From Podarcis muralis (lineage: Eukaryota): DNA of 64,000 nt. Shown here piece after piece: positions 39,665 to 47,227 of the stretch (its first letter is position 1; every line of letters begins with the position of its first letter). The notes under the pieces are model-generated. The model was not told the DNA's origin, did not search any database, and saw only the letters and a program-made list of their open reading frames with translations. The stretch is from positions 30,070,001-30,134,000 of the forward strand of contig NC_135668.1 of assembly GCF_964188315.1 (NCBI RefSeq), given 5' to 3'. The translations under genes and the position numbers were made by a program.

Positions 39665-40852
39665 GGGACTGGGTAAAAGGCGGATCCAGATGATTTTAAA
39701 CGGATCCTCATGAATTCATATGATTTTTTCATTCAAATTAAATAAAACCACCATGATACTGTAGTGTAGACCATGTCTGTAGGCAGAACCAAAAAAAATC
39801 AGGCATCCACTGTTTCGTGGGACTATGGTGCAAAAACATGGTTAAAAAACACGGATCCTCATGATTTTTGCACTAGATCAGCCCAAAGCCACCATCGGGT
39901 CAACATCATGGCCATGGGCACAGCATGCACCACAAAAAACTCAGATCCAGTTTCCTCGCCATACCATAGCCCAAAAACATGGTTCTGAAGCACGGATCCT
40001 CATGCTTTTTGGATTGGCCCAACCCAAACTTACCGTCAAATCACACATCATAGCCAGGGGCACAGTGTTGGTACTAAAGGGTTAAGAGGTAACAAGTCAC
40101 TCTAATCACTGAGCAGCTGGAAGTCATTAAGCATCCAGGAATGTGAGTTAGTTTGTATAAATAGTCAGTTCACCCGTGTGTCCTTCCCCCCTTCCCCCCT
40201 TTGACCTGACTCGCAGACTCAGTTTGTGGCCATGGGCGTGTTTGCTGATATGAGTTAAGTTTAGAGTAAAGTTTTCTTTATGCTGGAGATAAAAGCATGT
40301 GTGCTTTATCACCAGGGTTTTTTTGTAAATAAAGTTTTTCCTGAGTTCCAAAGTGCTTGCTCCAGGATTCTTCATTGAAAGGTACTGACTCTCCTGCCTT
40401 CTTCAACCGCTGCACGAAATTCTCTGCTGAGATAAGATTTATGGCGTTGGAAGCGCACTGGACGTTTACTTAATATTAAGCTAATTAAAGTTTAATGGAC
40501 ACACAGCCTGCACCACAAAAAACTTGGATCCACAGCTTCCTTGCAACTCCATGGCCCCAAAACGTGGTTCTGAAGCACGGATCCTCATGCATATTCATGC
40601 TTTTTGCATTGGGCCACCCCAAACTCACTGTCAAATCACATATCATAGCCAGGTGCACAGCCTGCACCACAAAAAACTCTGATCCACGGCTTCCTGGCCA
40701 TACCATGGCCCAAAAATGTGGTTTCCTGGCCATACGATGGCCCAAAAACGTGGTTCTGAAGCACGGATCCTCATGGATCCTCATGCTTTTTGCATTGGGC
40801 CACCCCTAACTCACTGTCAAATCACACATAGATCCGCCTTTAACCCAGTCCC
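39665..40852. mobile_element. Non-autonomous TIR element (GGG...CCC, possible 9-bp TSD) with ~145-bp internal tandem repeats
   Basis: 22-bp TIRs gggactgggtaaaaggcggatc (39665-39686) and gatccgcctttaacccagtccc (40831-40852), one mismatch; flanks gctagtgcc / actattgcc (7 of 9 match); four related internal units each containing cacggatcctcatg. Confidence 0.75.
40066..40501 (+). mobile_element. Solo LTR (436 bp) inserted in the TIR element
   Basis: TGT...ACA ends, perfect 5-bp TSD cacag (40061-40065, 40502-40506), TATAAATA 40156-40163, AATAAA 40328-40333; an uninterrupted sister repeat unit (ccaggtgcacagcctgcacc) shows the empty site. Confidence 0.85.
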
Positions 40853-41508
40853 ACTATTGCCATTCAAATGGTGTGCGTGTTAGGATATTTCCGTTCCACC
40901 TTAAGAGAGAGCAGGCTTGTGAGTCACAGAGTCTGCGTATTTCCTGTTACAGGATGTTTATGCTTGCTGTTTCCTTTCGATTTCAGTCGGTCGGAGACAC
41001 TGACACAGAACGGTCATGTTTTCCTTTGTTCTGTTCAACGCTAAATAAAGTCTGTAAATTATGCTCTCTTCTACGGTGCAAGCTTTCTGGCTGTGGTTCT
41101 GCTGATAAAGAACAGTGTGCACAAGCCTGGAATGTGGCAATCTATTTCTGAGGCTTCGTGTCGCTAACTGCTGGATCTGCCTGGCTACGGGAGATCGATG
41201 GAAGTCCGGCAGCCGGCTTGGGGCCATGATGGACTATATCTCCCTGGCAGTTTCCCAACAACAAGGTTTCGGGCCCAGATTCACAGCACCTACAGGAGAG
41301 TAAAGCTGCAACAGACTGCGTTTGAGAGGTATGTGAAAAGCGAAAGCAGCGAGAGCGGAGGCTTTTCTGTTTACCTCAACAAGGAGCCTTTGAACTCCGG
41401 CAAGGCTTAATTGGCCTGGGAGCCAAGCCAGGGAGTTCGTGATTAATGGGCTGCCGAGATAATAAGTCTTTGAAGGCATAAAGACTTGGGCTCACGTAAA
41501 GACCTGAG

Positions 41509-44500
41509 ATGGATCTTTTACAATCCTCAGAAGTAGCTCCGTGTCCACCAAAGCTACATGGGCAGAATTATGAAACCTGGGCAAAATGGTGTGAGAGTTT
41601 GCTGCGTCAGTTTAGGGTGTGGCATACCGTGAGTGAGGCCCCCCCAGTTCCTCTGACAGAGAGATGGAAAGCCGATGATTCGAAGGCGATTGACGTAATA
41701 GTCTTATCCGTATCTCTTGAGGAAATTAAGACGCTGGCTGGCAACACCACTGCACGTGGAATGTGGTATGCTTTGATGAAAGCTCACAACTCAGTTGTCC
41801 CAGCCCAGAGTTTGACTGCATCGGAGGTCCAAGCTGTTTCCCAGAATGCGAGTGTATGCAGGGATGCTGAGGGCACCGGTTGCAAGCTGCAGGGGGAGCA
41901 GACTGTGATGTCATCCCAGGCAGCATTCCAGCCTCCAGAGGGAGCCAAGGAGTCGGCAGCTGAGAGCTCTGTTTCTCGTGAGAACCAAGGTCATCGCCTT
42001 TGCAGAGGCCGGAAAGGCAAAGGTAAACAGGCGTCTGCAGATGGCCCGAAGCAGAAGGGGGGTGAAGAGCCCACGCCAGTGGAAAACAAGGCTTTGTTAG
42101 CTGGCACTGCTTCACCAAAGGCTAAAGGCACGTCTGCTGACCAGAAGCAGGGGGGCAAGCTGCAAAAGCCCACGCCAGTGGAAGACAAGGCTATGTCTGC
42201 TGGCACAGCTTCACCAAAGGCTAAAGGCACGTCTGCTGGCCAGGAGCAGCAGGGGGGCAAGCTGCAAAAGCCCAAGCAAGTGGAAAACAAGGGTTTGCTT
42301 GCTGTGAAGGCTGCTCCAACAGCCAAAGGCAGCTTTGTTGTTGATTCGGGCTGTACCCGCCACATCTCAAAGGATCGGCACCTCTTTATCTCCTTCAAGC
42401 CTCAGGAAGGTGAGATCCACCTGGCTGATGGAAGGACGTTGCAAATTGCAGGAGAAGGGACTGTGAAACTTGCAAGTTTGCACACAACCATCAGCGGGGT
42501 ACTATATGTTCCTGGAGCTGCAAGCAATTTATTGAGCGTCCCGCAGCTTACTGGACGTGGTTTTCAGATTTCCTTCAAGAGGAGCGTCTGTGTCATCAGT
42601 AAAGGCAAAGAGGACTATTTGCATGCAAAGTTTATGGATGGTTTGTTCCATATAACTTATGATGACACTGCTGTTGTATCTAATGCTGATTCTTGTTGTG
42701 TTGCACAAACTAACAAAGTTCTTCATGCAGGTTGCATTCATGAAGCGCATCGAAGGTTTGGTCACCTCTCTTGGAAGGCACTGGCCAAGATGCCAGAGGT
42801 GGTTGAGGGTTTGAACATCAAACCCTGTAAATTTCACATGAAATGTGTATCTTGTGCAGAGAACAAGGTGAAGGTTGCTCCAAAAGGCAAGGAGTCTAGC
42901 AGGCAGGCTTCCAAACCCTACCAGCTAGTGCATGTGGACCTGGTTGGGCCACTTACGCCCTCTTTAGGAGGAGCAAGGTTCTTCATGGTTCTAATTGATT
43001 CTTTTTCTAGGTACATTCATGTGTTTATGCTCGAGCAGAAATCGCAAGCGTTTCCGAAGTTTAAGGCATTCTGTGCTTGGTTGGAGAATGTGCACGGTAA
43101 ACGTATTTCCTGTCTTTTTACCGATCGGGGCGGGGAATTCACTTCTCAGCAGTTTGAAGCTTTCCTGACTGAGAAGGGAATCCAGCATGACATGTCAACC
43201 CCCAGATCGCCATGGATGAATGGGCTTGCGGAGAGAGCAAATCAAACATTGCTGCAAGGAATGAAAACCTTGTTGCATGATGCCAATCTCCCTGATAAGT
43301 TTTGGGGGGAGGCTTTAGGGAATCTGGTTTACTCCGTTAATCGCAGATTGTCATCACCCATTGGTTGTACCCCCTATGAGAAGATGTTTGGCAAGAAACC
43401 CAACACCAAACACATGAGAATTTTTGGTTCTGACATGTGGGTACGCACCCCACAAACCAACAAGCTTGGGAAGCGTGGGGCACATGGTTTGTTCATGGGG
43501 TACGAAAAAGGTGCATACAGGGTATGGATGACTAACTCTAAGTCCATTAAGTTCACAAGGAGTGTTGAGTACAATCCTAAGTGGGGGGAAAATGTGGGAA
43601 TTTTCCAGAGTTACCCAGAGGAGGATGAAGGTGATGTCAAGCAAGCAGCTAAAGCTGAGGAAGCTGCTGAGGATGATGATGATGAGGATGATGATGATGA
43701 TGATCAGAGTTCGGATTCCAGTTCAGTGGGCGGCGCTGCTGCTGATGTCAGTGAGAGTGATGACACAGCAGACTACAAGAGTGCAAAGGCCTCAGTCAGA
43801 CCATCTGATGCGTCTGACAATGAACTGGAAGAACCACTGTTCACCATTGGTCATTTTTCTCCTAAGAAAGAGGAGATGAGTCCAGAAGACTTGCGTCTAG
43901 TACGTAGGTCTGAAAGGGCGACCAAAGGCAGACCTCCTAAGAGGTATGCTGATGAGTTTGCTAAGACAGCAACTGCTGTTCTTAGTAGCTCAGAGAAGGT
44001 GTGGGAACCTTCAAGCTTCAAAGAGGTTCAGGAGTTAACCTCTAAAGATGCTGAGCCTTGGCTAAATGCCATGAAGGCTGAAGTTGATTCCTTGAACAGG
44101 AACCAAACTTGGGAGCTGGTACCGGTAGTCCCAGGTATGAGACTGGTAGGCAGCAAATGGGTCTTCAAGGCCAAGACAGACCAGAATGGCAAGGTAGTCA
44201 GACACAAAGCCAGATTGGTTGCCAGAGGTTTTTCACAGGTACCAGGACAGGATTACCACGAGACCTACTCACCCACCGTCAAATATGAGAGCATTCGGCT
44301 GATGCTCAAGATCGCTGCGGAGGAGAAACTGCATGTTTCTCATCATGACATTAATACAGCTTTTTTGTACGGGATTTTGAACGAGGAGCTGTTTATGCTT
44401 CCACCTGACGGGATGCAGATACAGAAGGGAATGGTCTGTAAACTGCGGAAATCCTTATATGGTCTCAAGCAGAGTGCTAGGTGTTGGAACACAAAACTCA

Positions 44501-45579
44501 CTGAAACGTTGCTTTCTCTAGGTTTTCACCAGGGCAAAGCTGATCCATGTGTGTTTGTTAAGGAGGAGGGGCAAAACAAACTGTATTGTTTATGTTTTGT
44601 TGATGATCTTCTGATGTTTTGGAAGAATCAGGCTTTCTATCAAAGCACCCTAGCTCAGCTGAAGGAGCACTTTGACATGAAGGATCTTGGTGAGGTATCC
44701 AACTATCTTTCTCTGCAGGTGGAGAAGGACCAAGCAGGTAATTTTCTGGTACACCAAACACAGAAAATTGCTGATGTATTAACCAGGTTGAATTTGGTTG
44801 ATGCAAACCCAGCAGACACACCGATGGTGACAGGTTACCAGGTAGACAGTACTGCTGAAGCGTTTTCTGACACAACGCTGTACAGATGCATTCTAGGTAA
44901 GCTGAATTTCATTGCCAGATGTTCAAGACCTGACATAGCTGTAAGCTGTAATCTGCTTAGCAGACATGCCAACAATCCTACGGTTCAGGATTGGAAAGCT
45001 CTGAAGCGCATAGCCCGCTATTTGAAAGGGACTATGCACTACAGGCTGAGGTTCACCAGTCAGAAGACTGGAGGTCTTGAAATCTTTGCAGATGCAAGTT
45101 TTGGAAGTGACACCACAGATGGTACAAGCACTTCTGGAGTGTGCTACATGTACAACCACTGCCTGTTTGACTGGTTGTGCAAGAAGCAAACAACAGTGAG
45201 CCTAAGTTCCTGTGAAGCAGAACTCAATGCTCTGTCATTTTCACTCATGGATTGTGAATGGTTGATGCAACTGTTTAAGGACATCGGGGTTTCTGTGAAA
45301 TGTCCTATACAAGTGTATCAAGACAATAGATCGTGTTTGGCTTTGCTGAACTCCGAGAGTTGCAAGCAAAGAACCAAGTACTTGCAGATTAAGCTACATC
45401 GTGCAAGAGAGTGTATTCAAAAGGGACTGATTCGGGTGTCCTACATGGCAGGAAATGAAATTCCTGCTGATCTGTTGTCTAAGGTTGTTAACAAAGAACA
45501 ACTTAAGGTTTACACACAGAGGTTGCAATTGGGTGAACCACAGGTACTACAGGTTACACGGAAAGGGGGAGGATGTTAG
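41509..45579 (+). CDS. Copia Gag-Pol polyprotein, 1356 aa
   Basis: Uninterrupted ORF: Gag N-terminus PKLHGQNYETW; protease FVVDSGCTRH; HHCC zinc region (HRRFGH...CVSC); integrase LVHVDLVGP / TDRGGEF / NGLAERAN; RT HHDINTAFLYG, LRKSLYGLKQSARCW, FVDD; RNase H FADAS / EAELNA / QDNRS / ADLLSK. Stop codon (GGA TGT TAG) lies inside the 3' LTR. Confidence 0.97.
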   Translation: MDLLQSSEVAPCPPKLHGQNYETWAKWCESLLRQFRVWHTVSEAPPVPLTERWKADDSKAIDVIVLSVSLEEIKTLAGNTTARGMWYALMKAHNSVVPAQSLTASEVQAVSQNASVCRDAEGTGCKLQGEQTVMSSQAAFQPPEGAKESAAESSVSRENQGHRLCRGRKGKGKQASADGPKQKGGEEPTPVENKALLAGTASPKAKGTSADQKQGGKLQKPTPVEDKAMSAGTASPKAKGTSAGQEQQGGKLQKPKQVENKGLLAVKAAPTAKGSFVVDSGCTRHISKDRHLFISFKPQEGEIHLADGRTLQIAGEGTVKLASLHTTISGVLYVPGAASNLLSVPQLTGRGFQISFKRSVCVISKGKEDYLHAKFMDGLFHITYDDTAVVSNADSCCVAQTNKVLHAGCIHEAHRRFGHLSWKALAKMPEVVEGLNIKPCKFHMKCVSCAENKVKVAPKGKESSRQASKPYQLVHVDLVGPLTPSLGGARFFMVLIDSFSRYIHVFMLEQKSQAFPKFKAFCAWLENVHGKRISCLFTDRGGEFTSQQFEAFLTEKGIQHDMSTPRSPWMNGLAERANQTLLQGMKTLLHDANLPDKFWGEALGNLVYSVNRRLSSPIGCTPYEKMFGKKPNTKHMRIFGSDMWVRTPQTNKLGKRGAHGLFMGYEKGAYRVWMTNSKSIKFTRSVEYNPKWGENVGIFQSYPEEDEGDVKQAAKAEEAAEDDDDEDDDDDDQSSDSSSVGGAAADVSESDDTADYKSAKASVRPSDASDNELEEPLFTIGHFSPKKEEMSPEDLRLVRRSERATKGRPPKRYADEFAKTATAVLSSSEKVWEPSSFKEVQELTSKDAEPWLNAMKAEVDSLNRNQTWELVPVVPGMRLVGSKWVFKAKTDQNGKVVRHKARLVARGFSQVPGQDYHETYSPTVKYESIRLMLKIAAEEKLHVSHHDINTAFLYGILNEELFMLPPDGMQIQKGMVCKLRKSLYGLKQSARCWNTKLTETLLSLGFHQGKADPCVFVKEEGQNKLYCLCFVDDLLMFWKNQAFYQSTLAQLKEHFDMKDLGEVSNYLSLQVEKDQAGNFLVHQTQKIADVLTRLNLVDANPADTPMVTGYQVDSTAEAFSDTTLYRCILGKLNFIARCSRPDIAVSCNLLSRHANNPTVQDWKALKRIARYLKGTMHYRLRFTSQKTGGLEIFADASFGSDTTDGTSTSGVCYMYNHCLFDWLCKKQTTVSLSSCEAELNALSFSLMDCEWLMQLFKDIGVSVKCPIQVYQDNRSCLALLNSESCKQRTKYLQIKLHRARECIQKGLIRVSYMAGNEIPADLLSKVVNKEQLKVYTQRLQLGEPQVLQVTRKGGGC
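42020..42330 (+). repeat. ~99-102-bp coding tandem repeat (3 copies) in copia Gag
   Basis: gccc(acgcca/aagcaa)gtggaa(a/g)acaag recurs at ~42069, 42168 and 42270; peptide (Q)GGKLQKPTPVE(N/D)KA..AGTASPKAKGTSA. Confidence 0.9.
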
Positions 45580-47227
45580 GATATTTCCGTTCCACCTTAA
45601 GAGAGAGCAGGCTTGTGAGTCACAGAGTCTGCGTATTTCCTGTTACAGGATGTTTATGCTTGCTGTTTCCTTTCGATTTCAGTCGGTCGGAGACACTGAC
45701 ACAGAACGGTCATGTTTTCCTTTGTTCTGTTCAACGCTAAATAAAGTCTGTAAATTATGCTCTCTTCTACGGTGCAAGCTTTCTGGCTGTGGTTCTGCTG
45801 ATAAAGAACAGTGTGCACAAGCCTGGAATGTGGCAATCTATTTCTGAGGCTTCGTGTCGCTAACTGCTGGATCTGCCTGGCTACGGGAGATCGATGGAAG
45901 TCCGGCAGCCGGCTTGGGGCCATGATGGACTATATCTCCCTGGCAGTTTCCCAACATGCATCATGTGATCGATTGTGTGGGACGGGGCTTATCTGGTGCG
46001 CCCAATATTTTATTCAAGTTGGCACCCCTGCTCTGAGGAATCAACTGGAGGAATCCCCCTTGCTTCCCACCCCCGAAAACAATAGAGTGCTGACGGAAGT
46101 TCCTCATTTGCAGCATTTGATGTAGGCTGAGGCCTCAGAAATAGGCAGGCAAGCATAGGTTTTAACACCATCCTGCAAACTATAGTTGTTTCTCCTCCAA
46201 TATTCAGAATGCAGGACAAATCAGAAAATGAGCTTTTGGGATTTGTCTTCCAGCTAACTTGTGAAACGCCCTGGGCATAAGATACCATGATGACAACTTT
46301 TAATAGAATTAAACTGAAGGAACCTTACTTCTGCCAGATTCACAAAATCTGACCTGGAACAAGGAACAGCTTAGGTGCCTGGGGCAGTGAACTGGGGCAG
46401 TACTGGACTTATAGTGCTTCTTAGAAGGTAATGGTTGTTCCTTCACATCTGTCACAAGCTACAAGCAACCCAGGTTGCCCCAAGCGCAGGCAGACAGGAG
46501 CACAGTAACTGCCTCCCCTCCCCCACCCCAGTACAATGAAGCTGAGAGAGACAGTGGTAGAAGGAACTCCTCAACATAAGGCTACAGTCCTTGCGATAAT
46601 TACCTGGGTTATGTCCCCTTGGGCTTCCTGCTCAGTAGGCAAGCCTAAGAGTGCACATTAACTCTGCTTTTAAAATCACTCAAGGCTTTTCTTCCCTGCC
46701 CCTTGCCAGAGAAACAGCTTGATGCTTGTGTTACATGTGTTACCTTGAATGAAGCTGTGGAGAGAATACCCTAAATAATTCAAACCAGGAGCAGAGAGGA
46801 ACTATTATGATGCCCCTACTACTGCCAAGCAGCTGGCGAAGCTGGACCACAGAAAACCAGGGCAAGCCTGAAACCAGGTCCCCTTTCCCTGTTTGGCAAA
46901 AGGCGCTGCTTTGGCAGGAGAGGGGGCGGGGGCTGAAGAACCGGTACCTCTGCCCAGCTACTGCTGATGGTATTGCTAGTGAAGAAAACAGACAGTGGAG
47001 AGAACCAGGAGCACTTCTGTGGCTTTCTTCGCAAAGGAGTTTGAAGGATTCCTCATTCTTTGCAGTTTCAAAAACCTCTGTGGGATGGCAGACCCTCCAG
47101 ATCACCTGAGAAACTTAACCTGACAGCAACCCCTGTTGCACCCACATCAGATCGGTCCATGGCTCTCTCAAGGGTTGAAAACTAAAATCTTTCTTTCCCC
47201 AACGCATGAGGTGATATGAGGCCTTTA

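What the first reader, a model, noticed from the sequence alone, without database searches (positions are those of the whole stretch)
40878..45956. Apparently intact, very young Ty1/copia retrotransposon in an amniote genome
Seen: two 383-bp LTRs with no difference by eye, a PPT, a PBS-like site and one stop-free 1356-aa ORF retaining protease (DSG), integrase (D,D,E) and RNase H (D,E,D,D) acidic residues. Established: LTRs are identical at insertion, and intact copia elements are not known from mammals or birds and are sparse in reptiles. Inference: a recent, possibly still mobile or polymorphic insertion.
Basis: partly seen in the sequence, partly recalled or inferred. Interest (0 to 1): 0.75.

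Follow-up and report, generated by a model that had tools for sequence, protein, structure and literature searches.

The report
Young copia retrotransposon in a wall lizard
This is a real, structurally complete and recently inserted copia-type jumping gene. It is one copy of a family with roughly a hundred or more near-identical, transcribed copies in this lizard, so it is an ordinary member of an active family and not a rare relic, although its coat-protein part is oddly shortened.

Summary
Observation confirmed. At 40878-45956 lies a 5079-bp Ty1/copia element. Its two 383-bp LTRs are identical (TG..CA). A 14-nt purine tract abuts the 3' LTR. One 1356-aa ORF carries gag, protease, integrase, RT and RNase H in copia order with all catalytic motifs.

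The rarity premise does not hold. In two DNA runs of the same species, contigs identical to this copy have about 100-300 times the word depth of the unique flank. A stranded RNA run shows one-directional transcripts of family members. Differences between copies in pol are mostly synonymous (18 of 24). Papers already report polymorphic Copia insertions in the green anole and expanding, expressed Copia in sea snakes. Earlier notes of this scan list at least six more intact young copia elements elsewhere in this genome (unchecked).

Caveats:
- Identical LTRs bound the age only to under about 1.6-4.9 million years.
- No clean target-site duplication can be called.
- The primer-binding site is only a 12/14 match by eye.
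- Presence or absence at this locus could not be tested.
- Gag keeps only about 90 homologous residues and lacks the CCHC knuckle that 99 of 101 relatives have, so the element may depend on another family's Gag.

Verdict: a new member of a known kind, of modest interest.

The parts
40878..41260 (+). 5' LTR, 383 bp, TG..CA. Holds an AP-1-like TGAGTCA at 40920 and AATAAA at 41044.
   Evidence: Identical to the 3' LTR; motifs.
41265..41278 (+). PBS-like site, 4 nt after the LTR. It resembles the copia-type site for the 5' half of initiator tRNA-Met (12/14 by eye).
   Evidence: Sequence. The tRNA sequence is recalled from memory and was not checked against a tool-derived sequence.
41261..41508 (+). 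Untranslated leader
   Evidence: Lies between the LTR end and the first ATG of the ORF.
41509..45579 (+). Single gag-pol ORF of 1356 aa. Its TAG stop lies 4-6 nt inside the 3' LTR.
41521..41787 (+). Gag N-terminal part, the only stretch of Gag homologous to relatives
   Evidence: tblastn with the gag parts of six relatives; Pfam Retrotran_gag_2 matches profile positions 2-84 of 172.
41788..42333 (+). Low-complexity A/G/K/S/Q-rich region with three Lys-rich repeats of about 33 aa (repeats span about 42065-42356). It stands where relatives have the rest of the capsid domain and the CCHC knuckle.
42334..42564 (+). Aspartic protease (DSG at aa 279)
   Evidence: Pfam Pol_BBD, E 3.4e-20; motif.
42688..43575 (+). 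Integrase: zinc-binding HHCC region, D,D35E core and SH3-like domain
   Evidence: Pfam gag_pre-integrs, rve and SH3_retrovirus; aligns to Ty1 integrase 7z0h; motifs.
43576..44100 (+). Acidic, Ser-rich linker that includes a GAT-type microsatellite at 43656-43704
44101..44829 (+). Reverse transcriptase (RVT_2), FVDD at aa 1030
45076..45483 (+). RNase H with D, E, D, D residues
   Evidence: Motifs; 70% identical to P0001 over RT-RNase H.
45560..45573 (+). Polypurine tract, lying inside the ORF
45574..45956 (+). 3' LTR, with AATAAA at 45740
40856..40877 (.). Left half of the high-copy host repeat that was the insertion target
   Evidence: Read-laying loose ends and joints (tables 5, 5c, 7).
45957..46030 (.). 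Right half of the same host repeat
   Evidence: many contigs join about 40875-40880 to about 46001-46006 with 31-40 letters between them.

Best explanation
This is a recently integrated, structurally complete copy of an abundant, recently amplified and transcribed Ty1/copia LTR retrotransposon family of a wall lizard. It sits inside a copy of a high-copy host repeat.

Inferred life cycle, taken from the copia/Ty1 paradigm and not shown here:
- The 5' LTR drives a genomic RNA that ends after the AATAAA in the 3' LTR.
- The single ORF is translated into a Gag-PR-IN-RT-RH polyprotein, which the DSG protease cuts.
- Minus-strand DNA synthesis starts at the site just after the 5' LTR, probably from a fragment of initiator tRNA-Met as in Drosophila copia.
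- Plus-strand synthesis starts at the purine tract beside the 3' LTR.
- The D,D35E integrase inserts the copy.

Shown here: the anatomy, the identical LTRs, the high copy number of near-identical sequence, one-directional transcripts of family members, and purifying selection on pol.

Inferred: that this particular copy is competent, and that its unusual Gag works. That Gag has a short capsid homology, no zinc knuckle and Lys-rich repeats, which may act as a basic chaperone region like that of Ty1.
For: Anatomy.

Family membership: Pfam RVT_2 at E 1.6e-68 and the PR-IN-RT order; the integrase aligns to Ty1 integrase.

Copy number: contigs identical to this copy have word depth 1358-2527 in X1 against 7.64 for the unique flank, and 1544-2629 in X8 against 13.1 (table 8). 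A 98%-identical 286-aa fragment sits on an independent Logan contig.

Transcription: in the stranded RNA run X23, depth is 6-30 on one strand and about 0-2 on the other across 41644-45623 (table 2).

Selection: among the best-supported differences between copies, pol has 18 synonymous and 6 non-synonymous changes against 27% synonymous expected (binomial p 1e-6).

Simple insertion: both flanks are colinear parts of one host repeat (tables 5 and 5c).

Precedent for a knuckle-free Gag: Ty1 Gag has no zinc finger and uses basic clusters as chaperone (PMC4551931).
Against: - No clean target-site duplication (GTGCG against TGCAT).
- The PBS match is imperfect and was judged against a remembered tRNA sequence.
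- Most RNA reads carry fixed differences from this copy, so other members are the main expressed ones (table 3).
- Gag lacks the CCHC knuckle present in 99 of 101 full-length relatives, including the closest one, and lacks the C-terminal capsid homology.
- Differences between copies in gag show no excess of synonymous changes (3 synonymous, 9 not; Fisher p 0.010 against pol).
- Read-depth ratios are only a rough proxy for copy number, as the tool itself warns.
Confidence: 0.85

Rival explanations
1. Semi-autonomous, Gag-dependent element. The family makes working PR-IN-RT-RH but cannot build its own capsid. It is packaged by Gag from a sibling copia family in the same genome, as barley BARE2 is packaged by BARE1 Gag.
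For: Only residues of about 5-93 of Gag are homologous to relatives, and no remnant of the missing part is found in any frame. There is no CCHC, against 99 of 101 relatives that have one. Differences between copies in gag look neutral while pol is constrained (Fisher p 0.010). BARE2 is a precedent: it makes no Gag, is packaged into particles and outnumbers BARE1 (PMC3735527). Earlier scan notes report other intact copia families and an RT-less gag-PR-IN lineage in this genome (unchecked).
Against: The gag frame is kept open over 275 codons, and contigs from the gag region are as high-copy as those from pol (table 8). The Lys-rich repeats could supply chaperone function as basic clusters do in Ty1. 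Only 12 gag variant sites were available, mostly in a low-complexity linker. No helper family was identified here.
Confidence: 0.35
2. The perfection is partly an assembly artefact. In a family with many near-identical copies, collapse or short-read polishing may have pulled this copy toward the family majority, which would erase real LTR differences or frame breaks.
For: Many stretches of this copy equal the highest-depth family contigs with 0-2 differences (table 8), as a majority-like sequence would. No contig or read spanning the LTR-flank junctions was recovered.
Against: A genuinely young copy is also expected to look majority-like. At several sites the other letter holds all or nearly all of the DNA contig depth (for example 41550, 43317, 44148, 44559, table 3), which argues against full homogenisation to the majority. 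The flanks are colinear parts of one repeat copy.
Confidence: 0.1
3. This is an older insertion whose LTRs were homogenised by gene conversion, or a product of recombination between two copies.
For: There is no matching 5-bp duplication at the two junctions even though there are zero LTR differences.
Against: The two flanks belong to one host repeat in the right order and spacing, which recombination between copies at different sites would not give. The junction lies in a TGCR-rich tract where a duplication cannot be read. The ORF is fully open.
Confidence: 0.05

Closest known systems
Drosophila copia and the Ty1/copia superfamily (Pseudoviridae)
   Same: Domain order gag-PR-IN-RT-RH in one ORF, RVT_2-type RT, TG..CA LTRs, a purine tract at the 3' LTR, no env, and a primer site that does not start with TGG and resembles the internal initiator-tRNA site.
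   Different: RT-RNase H is at most about 42% identical to any named non-squamate relative found. Gag has no CCHC and a truncated capsid homology. The ORF runs through the purine tract into the LTR.
Copia families of other squamates (green anole polymorphic Copia insertions; expanding, expressed Copia of hydrophiine snakes)
   Same: Young, active-looking Copia in a squamate genome. Copia is retained in reptiles while lost in birds and mammals (PMC4350176, PMC7561263, PMC8872380).
   Different: No sequence of those families was available here, so relatedness is untested. No paper in the searched library describes Copia in Podarcis. Repbase and Dfam could not be consulted.
P0001 (unnamed ENA contig, 4.9 kb) and the copia RT piece inside an Elgaria multicarinata gene model (P0046)
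   Same: These are the closest relatives found: 59% identity over PR-RH and 70% over RT-RH for P0001, and 61% for the Elgaria piece. The three form a clade with full support on a long stem.
   Different: P0001 has a full Gag with a CCHC knuckle. The host of P0001 is unknown.
Barley BARE2 (parasitic copia without its own Gag)
   Same: A copia with usable pol but no canonical Gag that is nevertheless abundant.
   Different: BARE2 lost the gag start codon. Here the gag frame is open, but most of the capsid and nucleocapsid part is replaced by a low-complexity Lys-rich region. Dependence on a helper is not shown.
Yeast Ty1
   Same: The integrase core aligns (7z0h, E 7e-13). Ty1 Gag also works without a zinc knuckle, using basic clusters.
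   Different: Ty1 uses a frameshift between gag and pol and the 3' end of initiator tRNA. It is a distant lineage.

Membership tests
Ty1/copia LTR retrotransposons | Integrase encoded upstream of RT (order PR-IN-RT-RH) | tested here: met
   Pfam domains in that order on one ORF.
Ty1/copia LTR retrotransposons | RT of the RVT_2 type | tested here: met
   PF07727 at E 1.6e-68, covering 243 of 244 profile positions.
Ty1/copia LTR retrotransposons | Direct long terminal repeats ending TG..CA | tested here: met
   383/383 identical, with TG..CA termini.
Ty1/copia LTR retrotransposons | Polypurine tract next to the 3' LTR | tested here: met
   14 purines at 45560-45573.
Ty1/copia LTR retrotransposons | Primer-binding site complementary to a tRNA, next to the 5' LTR | tested here: inconclusive
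   12/14 match by eye to the initiator-tRNA half site, using a remembered tRNA sequence. No tRNA gene in the window and no Rfam match.
Ty1/copia LTR retrotransposons | Target-site duplication of 4-6 bp | tested here: inconclusive
   GTGCG against TGCAT. The best reading is 4 bp, TGCG against TGCA, with one mismatch. Paralogous copies of the host repeat show a variable TGCR tract at the site (table 5c).
Ty1/copia LTR retrotransposons | Gag with capsid domain and (usually) a CCHC knuckle | tested here: not met
   Only profile positions 2-84 of 172 match. No CCHC, against 99 of 101 relatives that have one. This feature is typical and not obligatory, since Ty1 lacks the knuckle.
Currently active (transposition-competent) family | Many near-identical copies | tested here: met
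   About 100-300-fold word depth over the unique flank in two DNA runs. This is a rough proxy.
Currently active (transposition-competent) family | Sense transcripts | tested here: met
   Strongly one-sided depth in the stranded run X23. The sense direction assumes the usual library type. Most reads come from other members of the family.
Currently active (transposition-competent) family | Insertion polymorphism between individuals | not testable with these tools

The most novel reading that the evidence does not exclude
The family has lost most of its capsid and nucleocapsid coding part yet reached about a hundred or more near-identical copies. One reading is that its Lys-rich repeats are a new kind of Gag C-terminus. 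That would be a set of mutually complementing defective copia lineages in an amniote.
Probability: 0.3. Interest if true: 0.55.

Novelty: new member of a known kind. Interest (0 to 1): 0.3.

Why it matters
It documents that wall lizards carry a high-copy, transcribed, recently amplified copia family. This fits what is known from anoles and sea snakes and corrects the idea that such elements are rare in reptiles. Practical value: these insertions can serve as polymorphic markers and as a source of mutation in Podarcis population genomics. The family's odd Gag offers a natural case for asking how much of Gag a copia element needs.

Tried and rejected
The cluster look-up gave no name or accession.
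- ARAGORN found no tRNA gene in the window, and Rfam at permissive E-values gave only chance-level hits in the element.
- I tested whether U5 is complementary to the PBS region, as a sense copy of the primer in U5 would imply (lead from earlier notes on other copia families). The duplex energy of -26.2 was reached by 179 of 500 shuffles, so this is not supported for this element.
- A single-sequence structure prediction of Gag residues 1-275 gave mean pLDDT 39.9, which is uninformative.
- Pfam scans of the ten longest other ORFs in the window found nothing, so the host-gene context of the insertion stays unknown.
- A look-up of earlier findings by sequence was blank, which means nothing.
- The empty-site test failed. 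The 'skipping' joints in the DNA runs are paralogous copies of the host repeat (tens of contigs, with variable letters between), not the empty allele.
- Rejected readings: an endogenous retrovirus or gypsy-type element (wrong domain order and RT family), and a domesticated host gene (LTRs, multi-copy).
- The large all-against-all protein search was not used, as the operators advised.
Full report
**Observation.** The repeat finder and a pairwise alignment show two direct repeats, 40878-41260 and 45574-45956. They are identical at all 383 positions, and identity stops exactly at both ends. A 30-nt motif from the LTR start occurs only at these two places in the window, with none expected by chance. 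The LTRs begin TG and end CA, with a 6/7 terminal inverted repeat, an AATAAA at 41044 (and 45740) and an AP-1-like TGAGTCA at 40920. A 14-nt purine run at 45560-45573 abuts the 3' LTR. Between the LTRs is one ORF, 41509-45579, of 1356 codons. The next longest ORF in the 64-kb window is 319 aa, and the ten longest others have no Pfam match. The window contains no N.

**What the ORF encodes.** Pfam gives, in order: copia-type gag (residues 29-104 only), the Pol beta-barrel protease domain, the GAG-pre-integrase domain, the integrase core, the SH3-like domain and RVT_2 (E 1.6e-68).
- Protease: DSG at 279.
- Integrase: an H..H..C..C zinc-binding pattern at 406-449, then D477, D539 and E575 with 35 residues between the last two.
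- RT: D947 and FVDD at 1030.
- RNase H: D1195, the CEAEL glutamates, D1272 and D1321.

The integrase core aligns to the solved Ty1 integrase 7z0h (E 7e-13). The domain order and RT family make it Ty1/copia, not gypsy or retroviral. The stop codon lies inside the 3' LTR, so the frame runs through the purine tract.

**Weak points of the anatomy.**
- Target-site duplication: the left flank ends GTGCG and the right flank starts TGCAT, so there is no clean 5-bp duplication. The best reading is 4 bp (TGCG against TGCA) with one mismatch. The read-laying output shows that 40856-40877 and 45957-46030 are two halves of one high-copy host repeat. Tens of contigs join about 40875-40880 to about 46001-46006 with 31-40 variable letters between them (tables 5, 5c, 7). 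This shows a simple insertion into one repeat copy. The paralogues vary in a TGCR-rich tract exactly at the site, so the duplication cannot be read from them.
- Primer site: 41265-41278 resembles the internal initiator-tRNA site used by Drosophila copia at 12 of 14 positions. I judged this by eye against a tRNA sequence recalled from memory. No tRNA gene or Rfam match was available to test it. A test for U5-PBS complementarity was no better than shuffles.

**The family.** In two DNA runs of the same species, contigs identical to this copy have word depths far above the contig that covers the unique right flank (table 8):

| Run | Element contigs | Unique flank |
|---|---|---|
| X1 | 1358-2527 | 7.64 |
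| X8 | 1544-2629 | 13.1 |

The tool warns that such depths are no exact copy number. As a rough ratio they indicate on the order of 100-300 copies' worth of identical 31-mers, gag region included. A 286-aa fragment that is 98% identical sits on an independent Logan contig.

In the stranded RNA run X23, depth is 6-30 on one strand and about 0-2 on the other from 41644 to 45623 (table 2). With the usual library type these are sense transcripts. Most reads carry fixed differences from this copy (table 3) and only 97 of 820 are at least 99% alike, so the main expressed copies are other members.

I classified the 36 best-supported differences that fall in the ORF:
- Pol has 18 synonymous and 6 non-synonymous changes, against about 27% synonymous expected (binomial p 1e-6).
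- Gag has 3 synonymous and 9 non-synonymous.
- Fisher's test of gag against pol gives p 0.010.

Pol has therefore diverged along replicating lineages. Earlier notes of this scan call the genome a wall lizard and list at least six other 'intact young copia' notes elsewhere in it. I did not check them and use them only as leads.

**Age.** Zero differences in 2 x 383 bp give a 95% upper bound of about 1.6-4.9 My for assumed neutral rates of 2.4e-9 to 0.8e-9 per site per year. The rates are my assumption. 'Very young' is fair on an evolutionary scale but does not by itself show a polymorphic insertion. Contigs break at the repeat flanks, so occupancy in other individuals could not be read.

**Gag.** tblastn with the gag parts of six relatives matches only window 41521-41787, then resumes at the protease, with no remnant in other frames. 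Residues 94-275 are A/G/K/S/Q-rich and include three Lys-rich repeats of about 33 aa. The element has no CCHC knuckle, whereas 99 of 101 full-length relatives have one, including the closest. Two readings remain:
- The basic repeats replace the knuckle, as basic clusters do in Ty1 Gag (PMC4551931).
- The family borrows Gag from a sibling copia family, as BARE2 borrows from BARE1 (PMC3735527).

The neutral-looking gag differences lean toward the second reading, but they are few and lie mostly in the low-complexity part. A single-sequence fold of Gag was uninformative.

**Relatives.** Word searches of the large protein collection found only one full-length relative above 40% identity: P0001, with 59% over PR-RH and 70% over RT-RH. 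It comes from an unnamed 4.9-kb ENA contig. A 61%-identical RT piece sits inside an Elgaria gene model. All other hits are at most about 42% identical. In a quick maximum-likelihood tree of RT-RNase H, these three form a fully supported clade on a long stem (1.34 changes per site). The clade sits within a group of animal copia elements and apart from the plant ones.

**Comparison with what is known.**
- Copia was lost in birds and mammals but is retained in reptiles (PMC4350176).
- The green anole has 1962 polymorphic Copia insertions (PMC7561263).
- Copia is expanding and expressed in hydrophiine snakes (PMC8872380).
- A Repbase library for Podarcis exists (PMC10214862), but I could not consult it.
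- No paper in the library describes Podarcis copia.

**Verdict.** The element is a new, or possibly already catalogued, member of a known kind. The truncated Gag is the one feature worth a further look.

Noticed in passing
window 39700-40877 and 45957-46220: The insertion sits in very high-copy host repeat, with summed word depth of 3000-29000 against 7.6-13 for unique sequence. Upstream there are tandem-like units of about 150-190 bp (39800-40850), possibly SINE-derived.
   Followed up: partly
window 41270: In the single-cell RNA run, 17 reads follow the LTR plus 10 nt and then continue into a different sequence (agreement 0.97). Some other transcribed element or derivative appears to share this LTR and the first bases after it.
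   Followed up: no
window 43181 and 44050: Both DNA runs show the 44050 break point; the 43181 one appears in DNA run X1 and in 9 RNA reads. At each, other family copies continue into unrelated sequence. These are deletion derivatives or nested insertions, and at least one is expressed.
   Followed up: no
window 45574-45579: The ORF's stop codon is the TAG inside the first six bases of the 3' LTR, so the coding frame covers the whole purine tract. The closest relative, P0001, ends about 15 residues earlier in the alignment.
   Followed up: partly
window 43656-43704: A GAT-type microsatellite encodes an Asp/Glu-rich run in the linker between integrase and RT. The read-laying tool skipped this stretch as a repeat.
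   Followed up: no
P0046 (Elgaria multicarinata webbii gene model): This annotated 'uncharacterized protein' combines LINE-type RT and endonuclease domains with a copia RVT_2 piece. It is probably a chimeric gene model across nested transposons.
   Followed up: no
window 40920-40926: An AP-1-like TGAGTCA lies in the putative U3. No TATA box was found. Seven single-cell RNA molecules begin at 40998, which is a weak hint of a start site about 46 nt upstream of the AATAAA.
   Followed up: no
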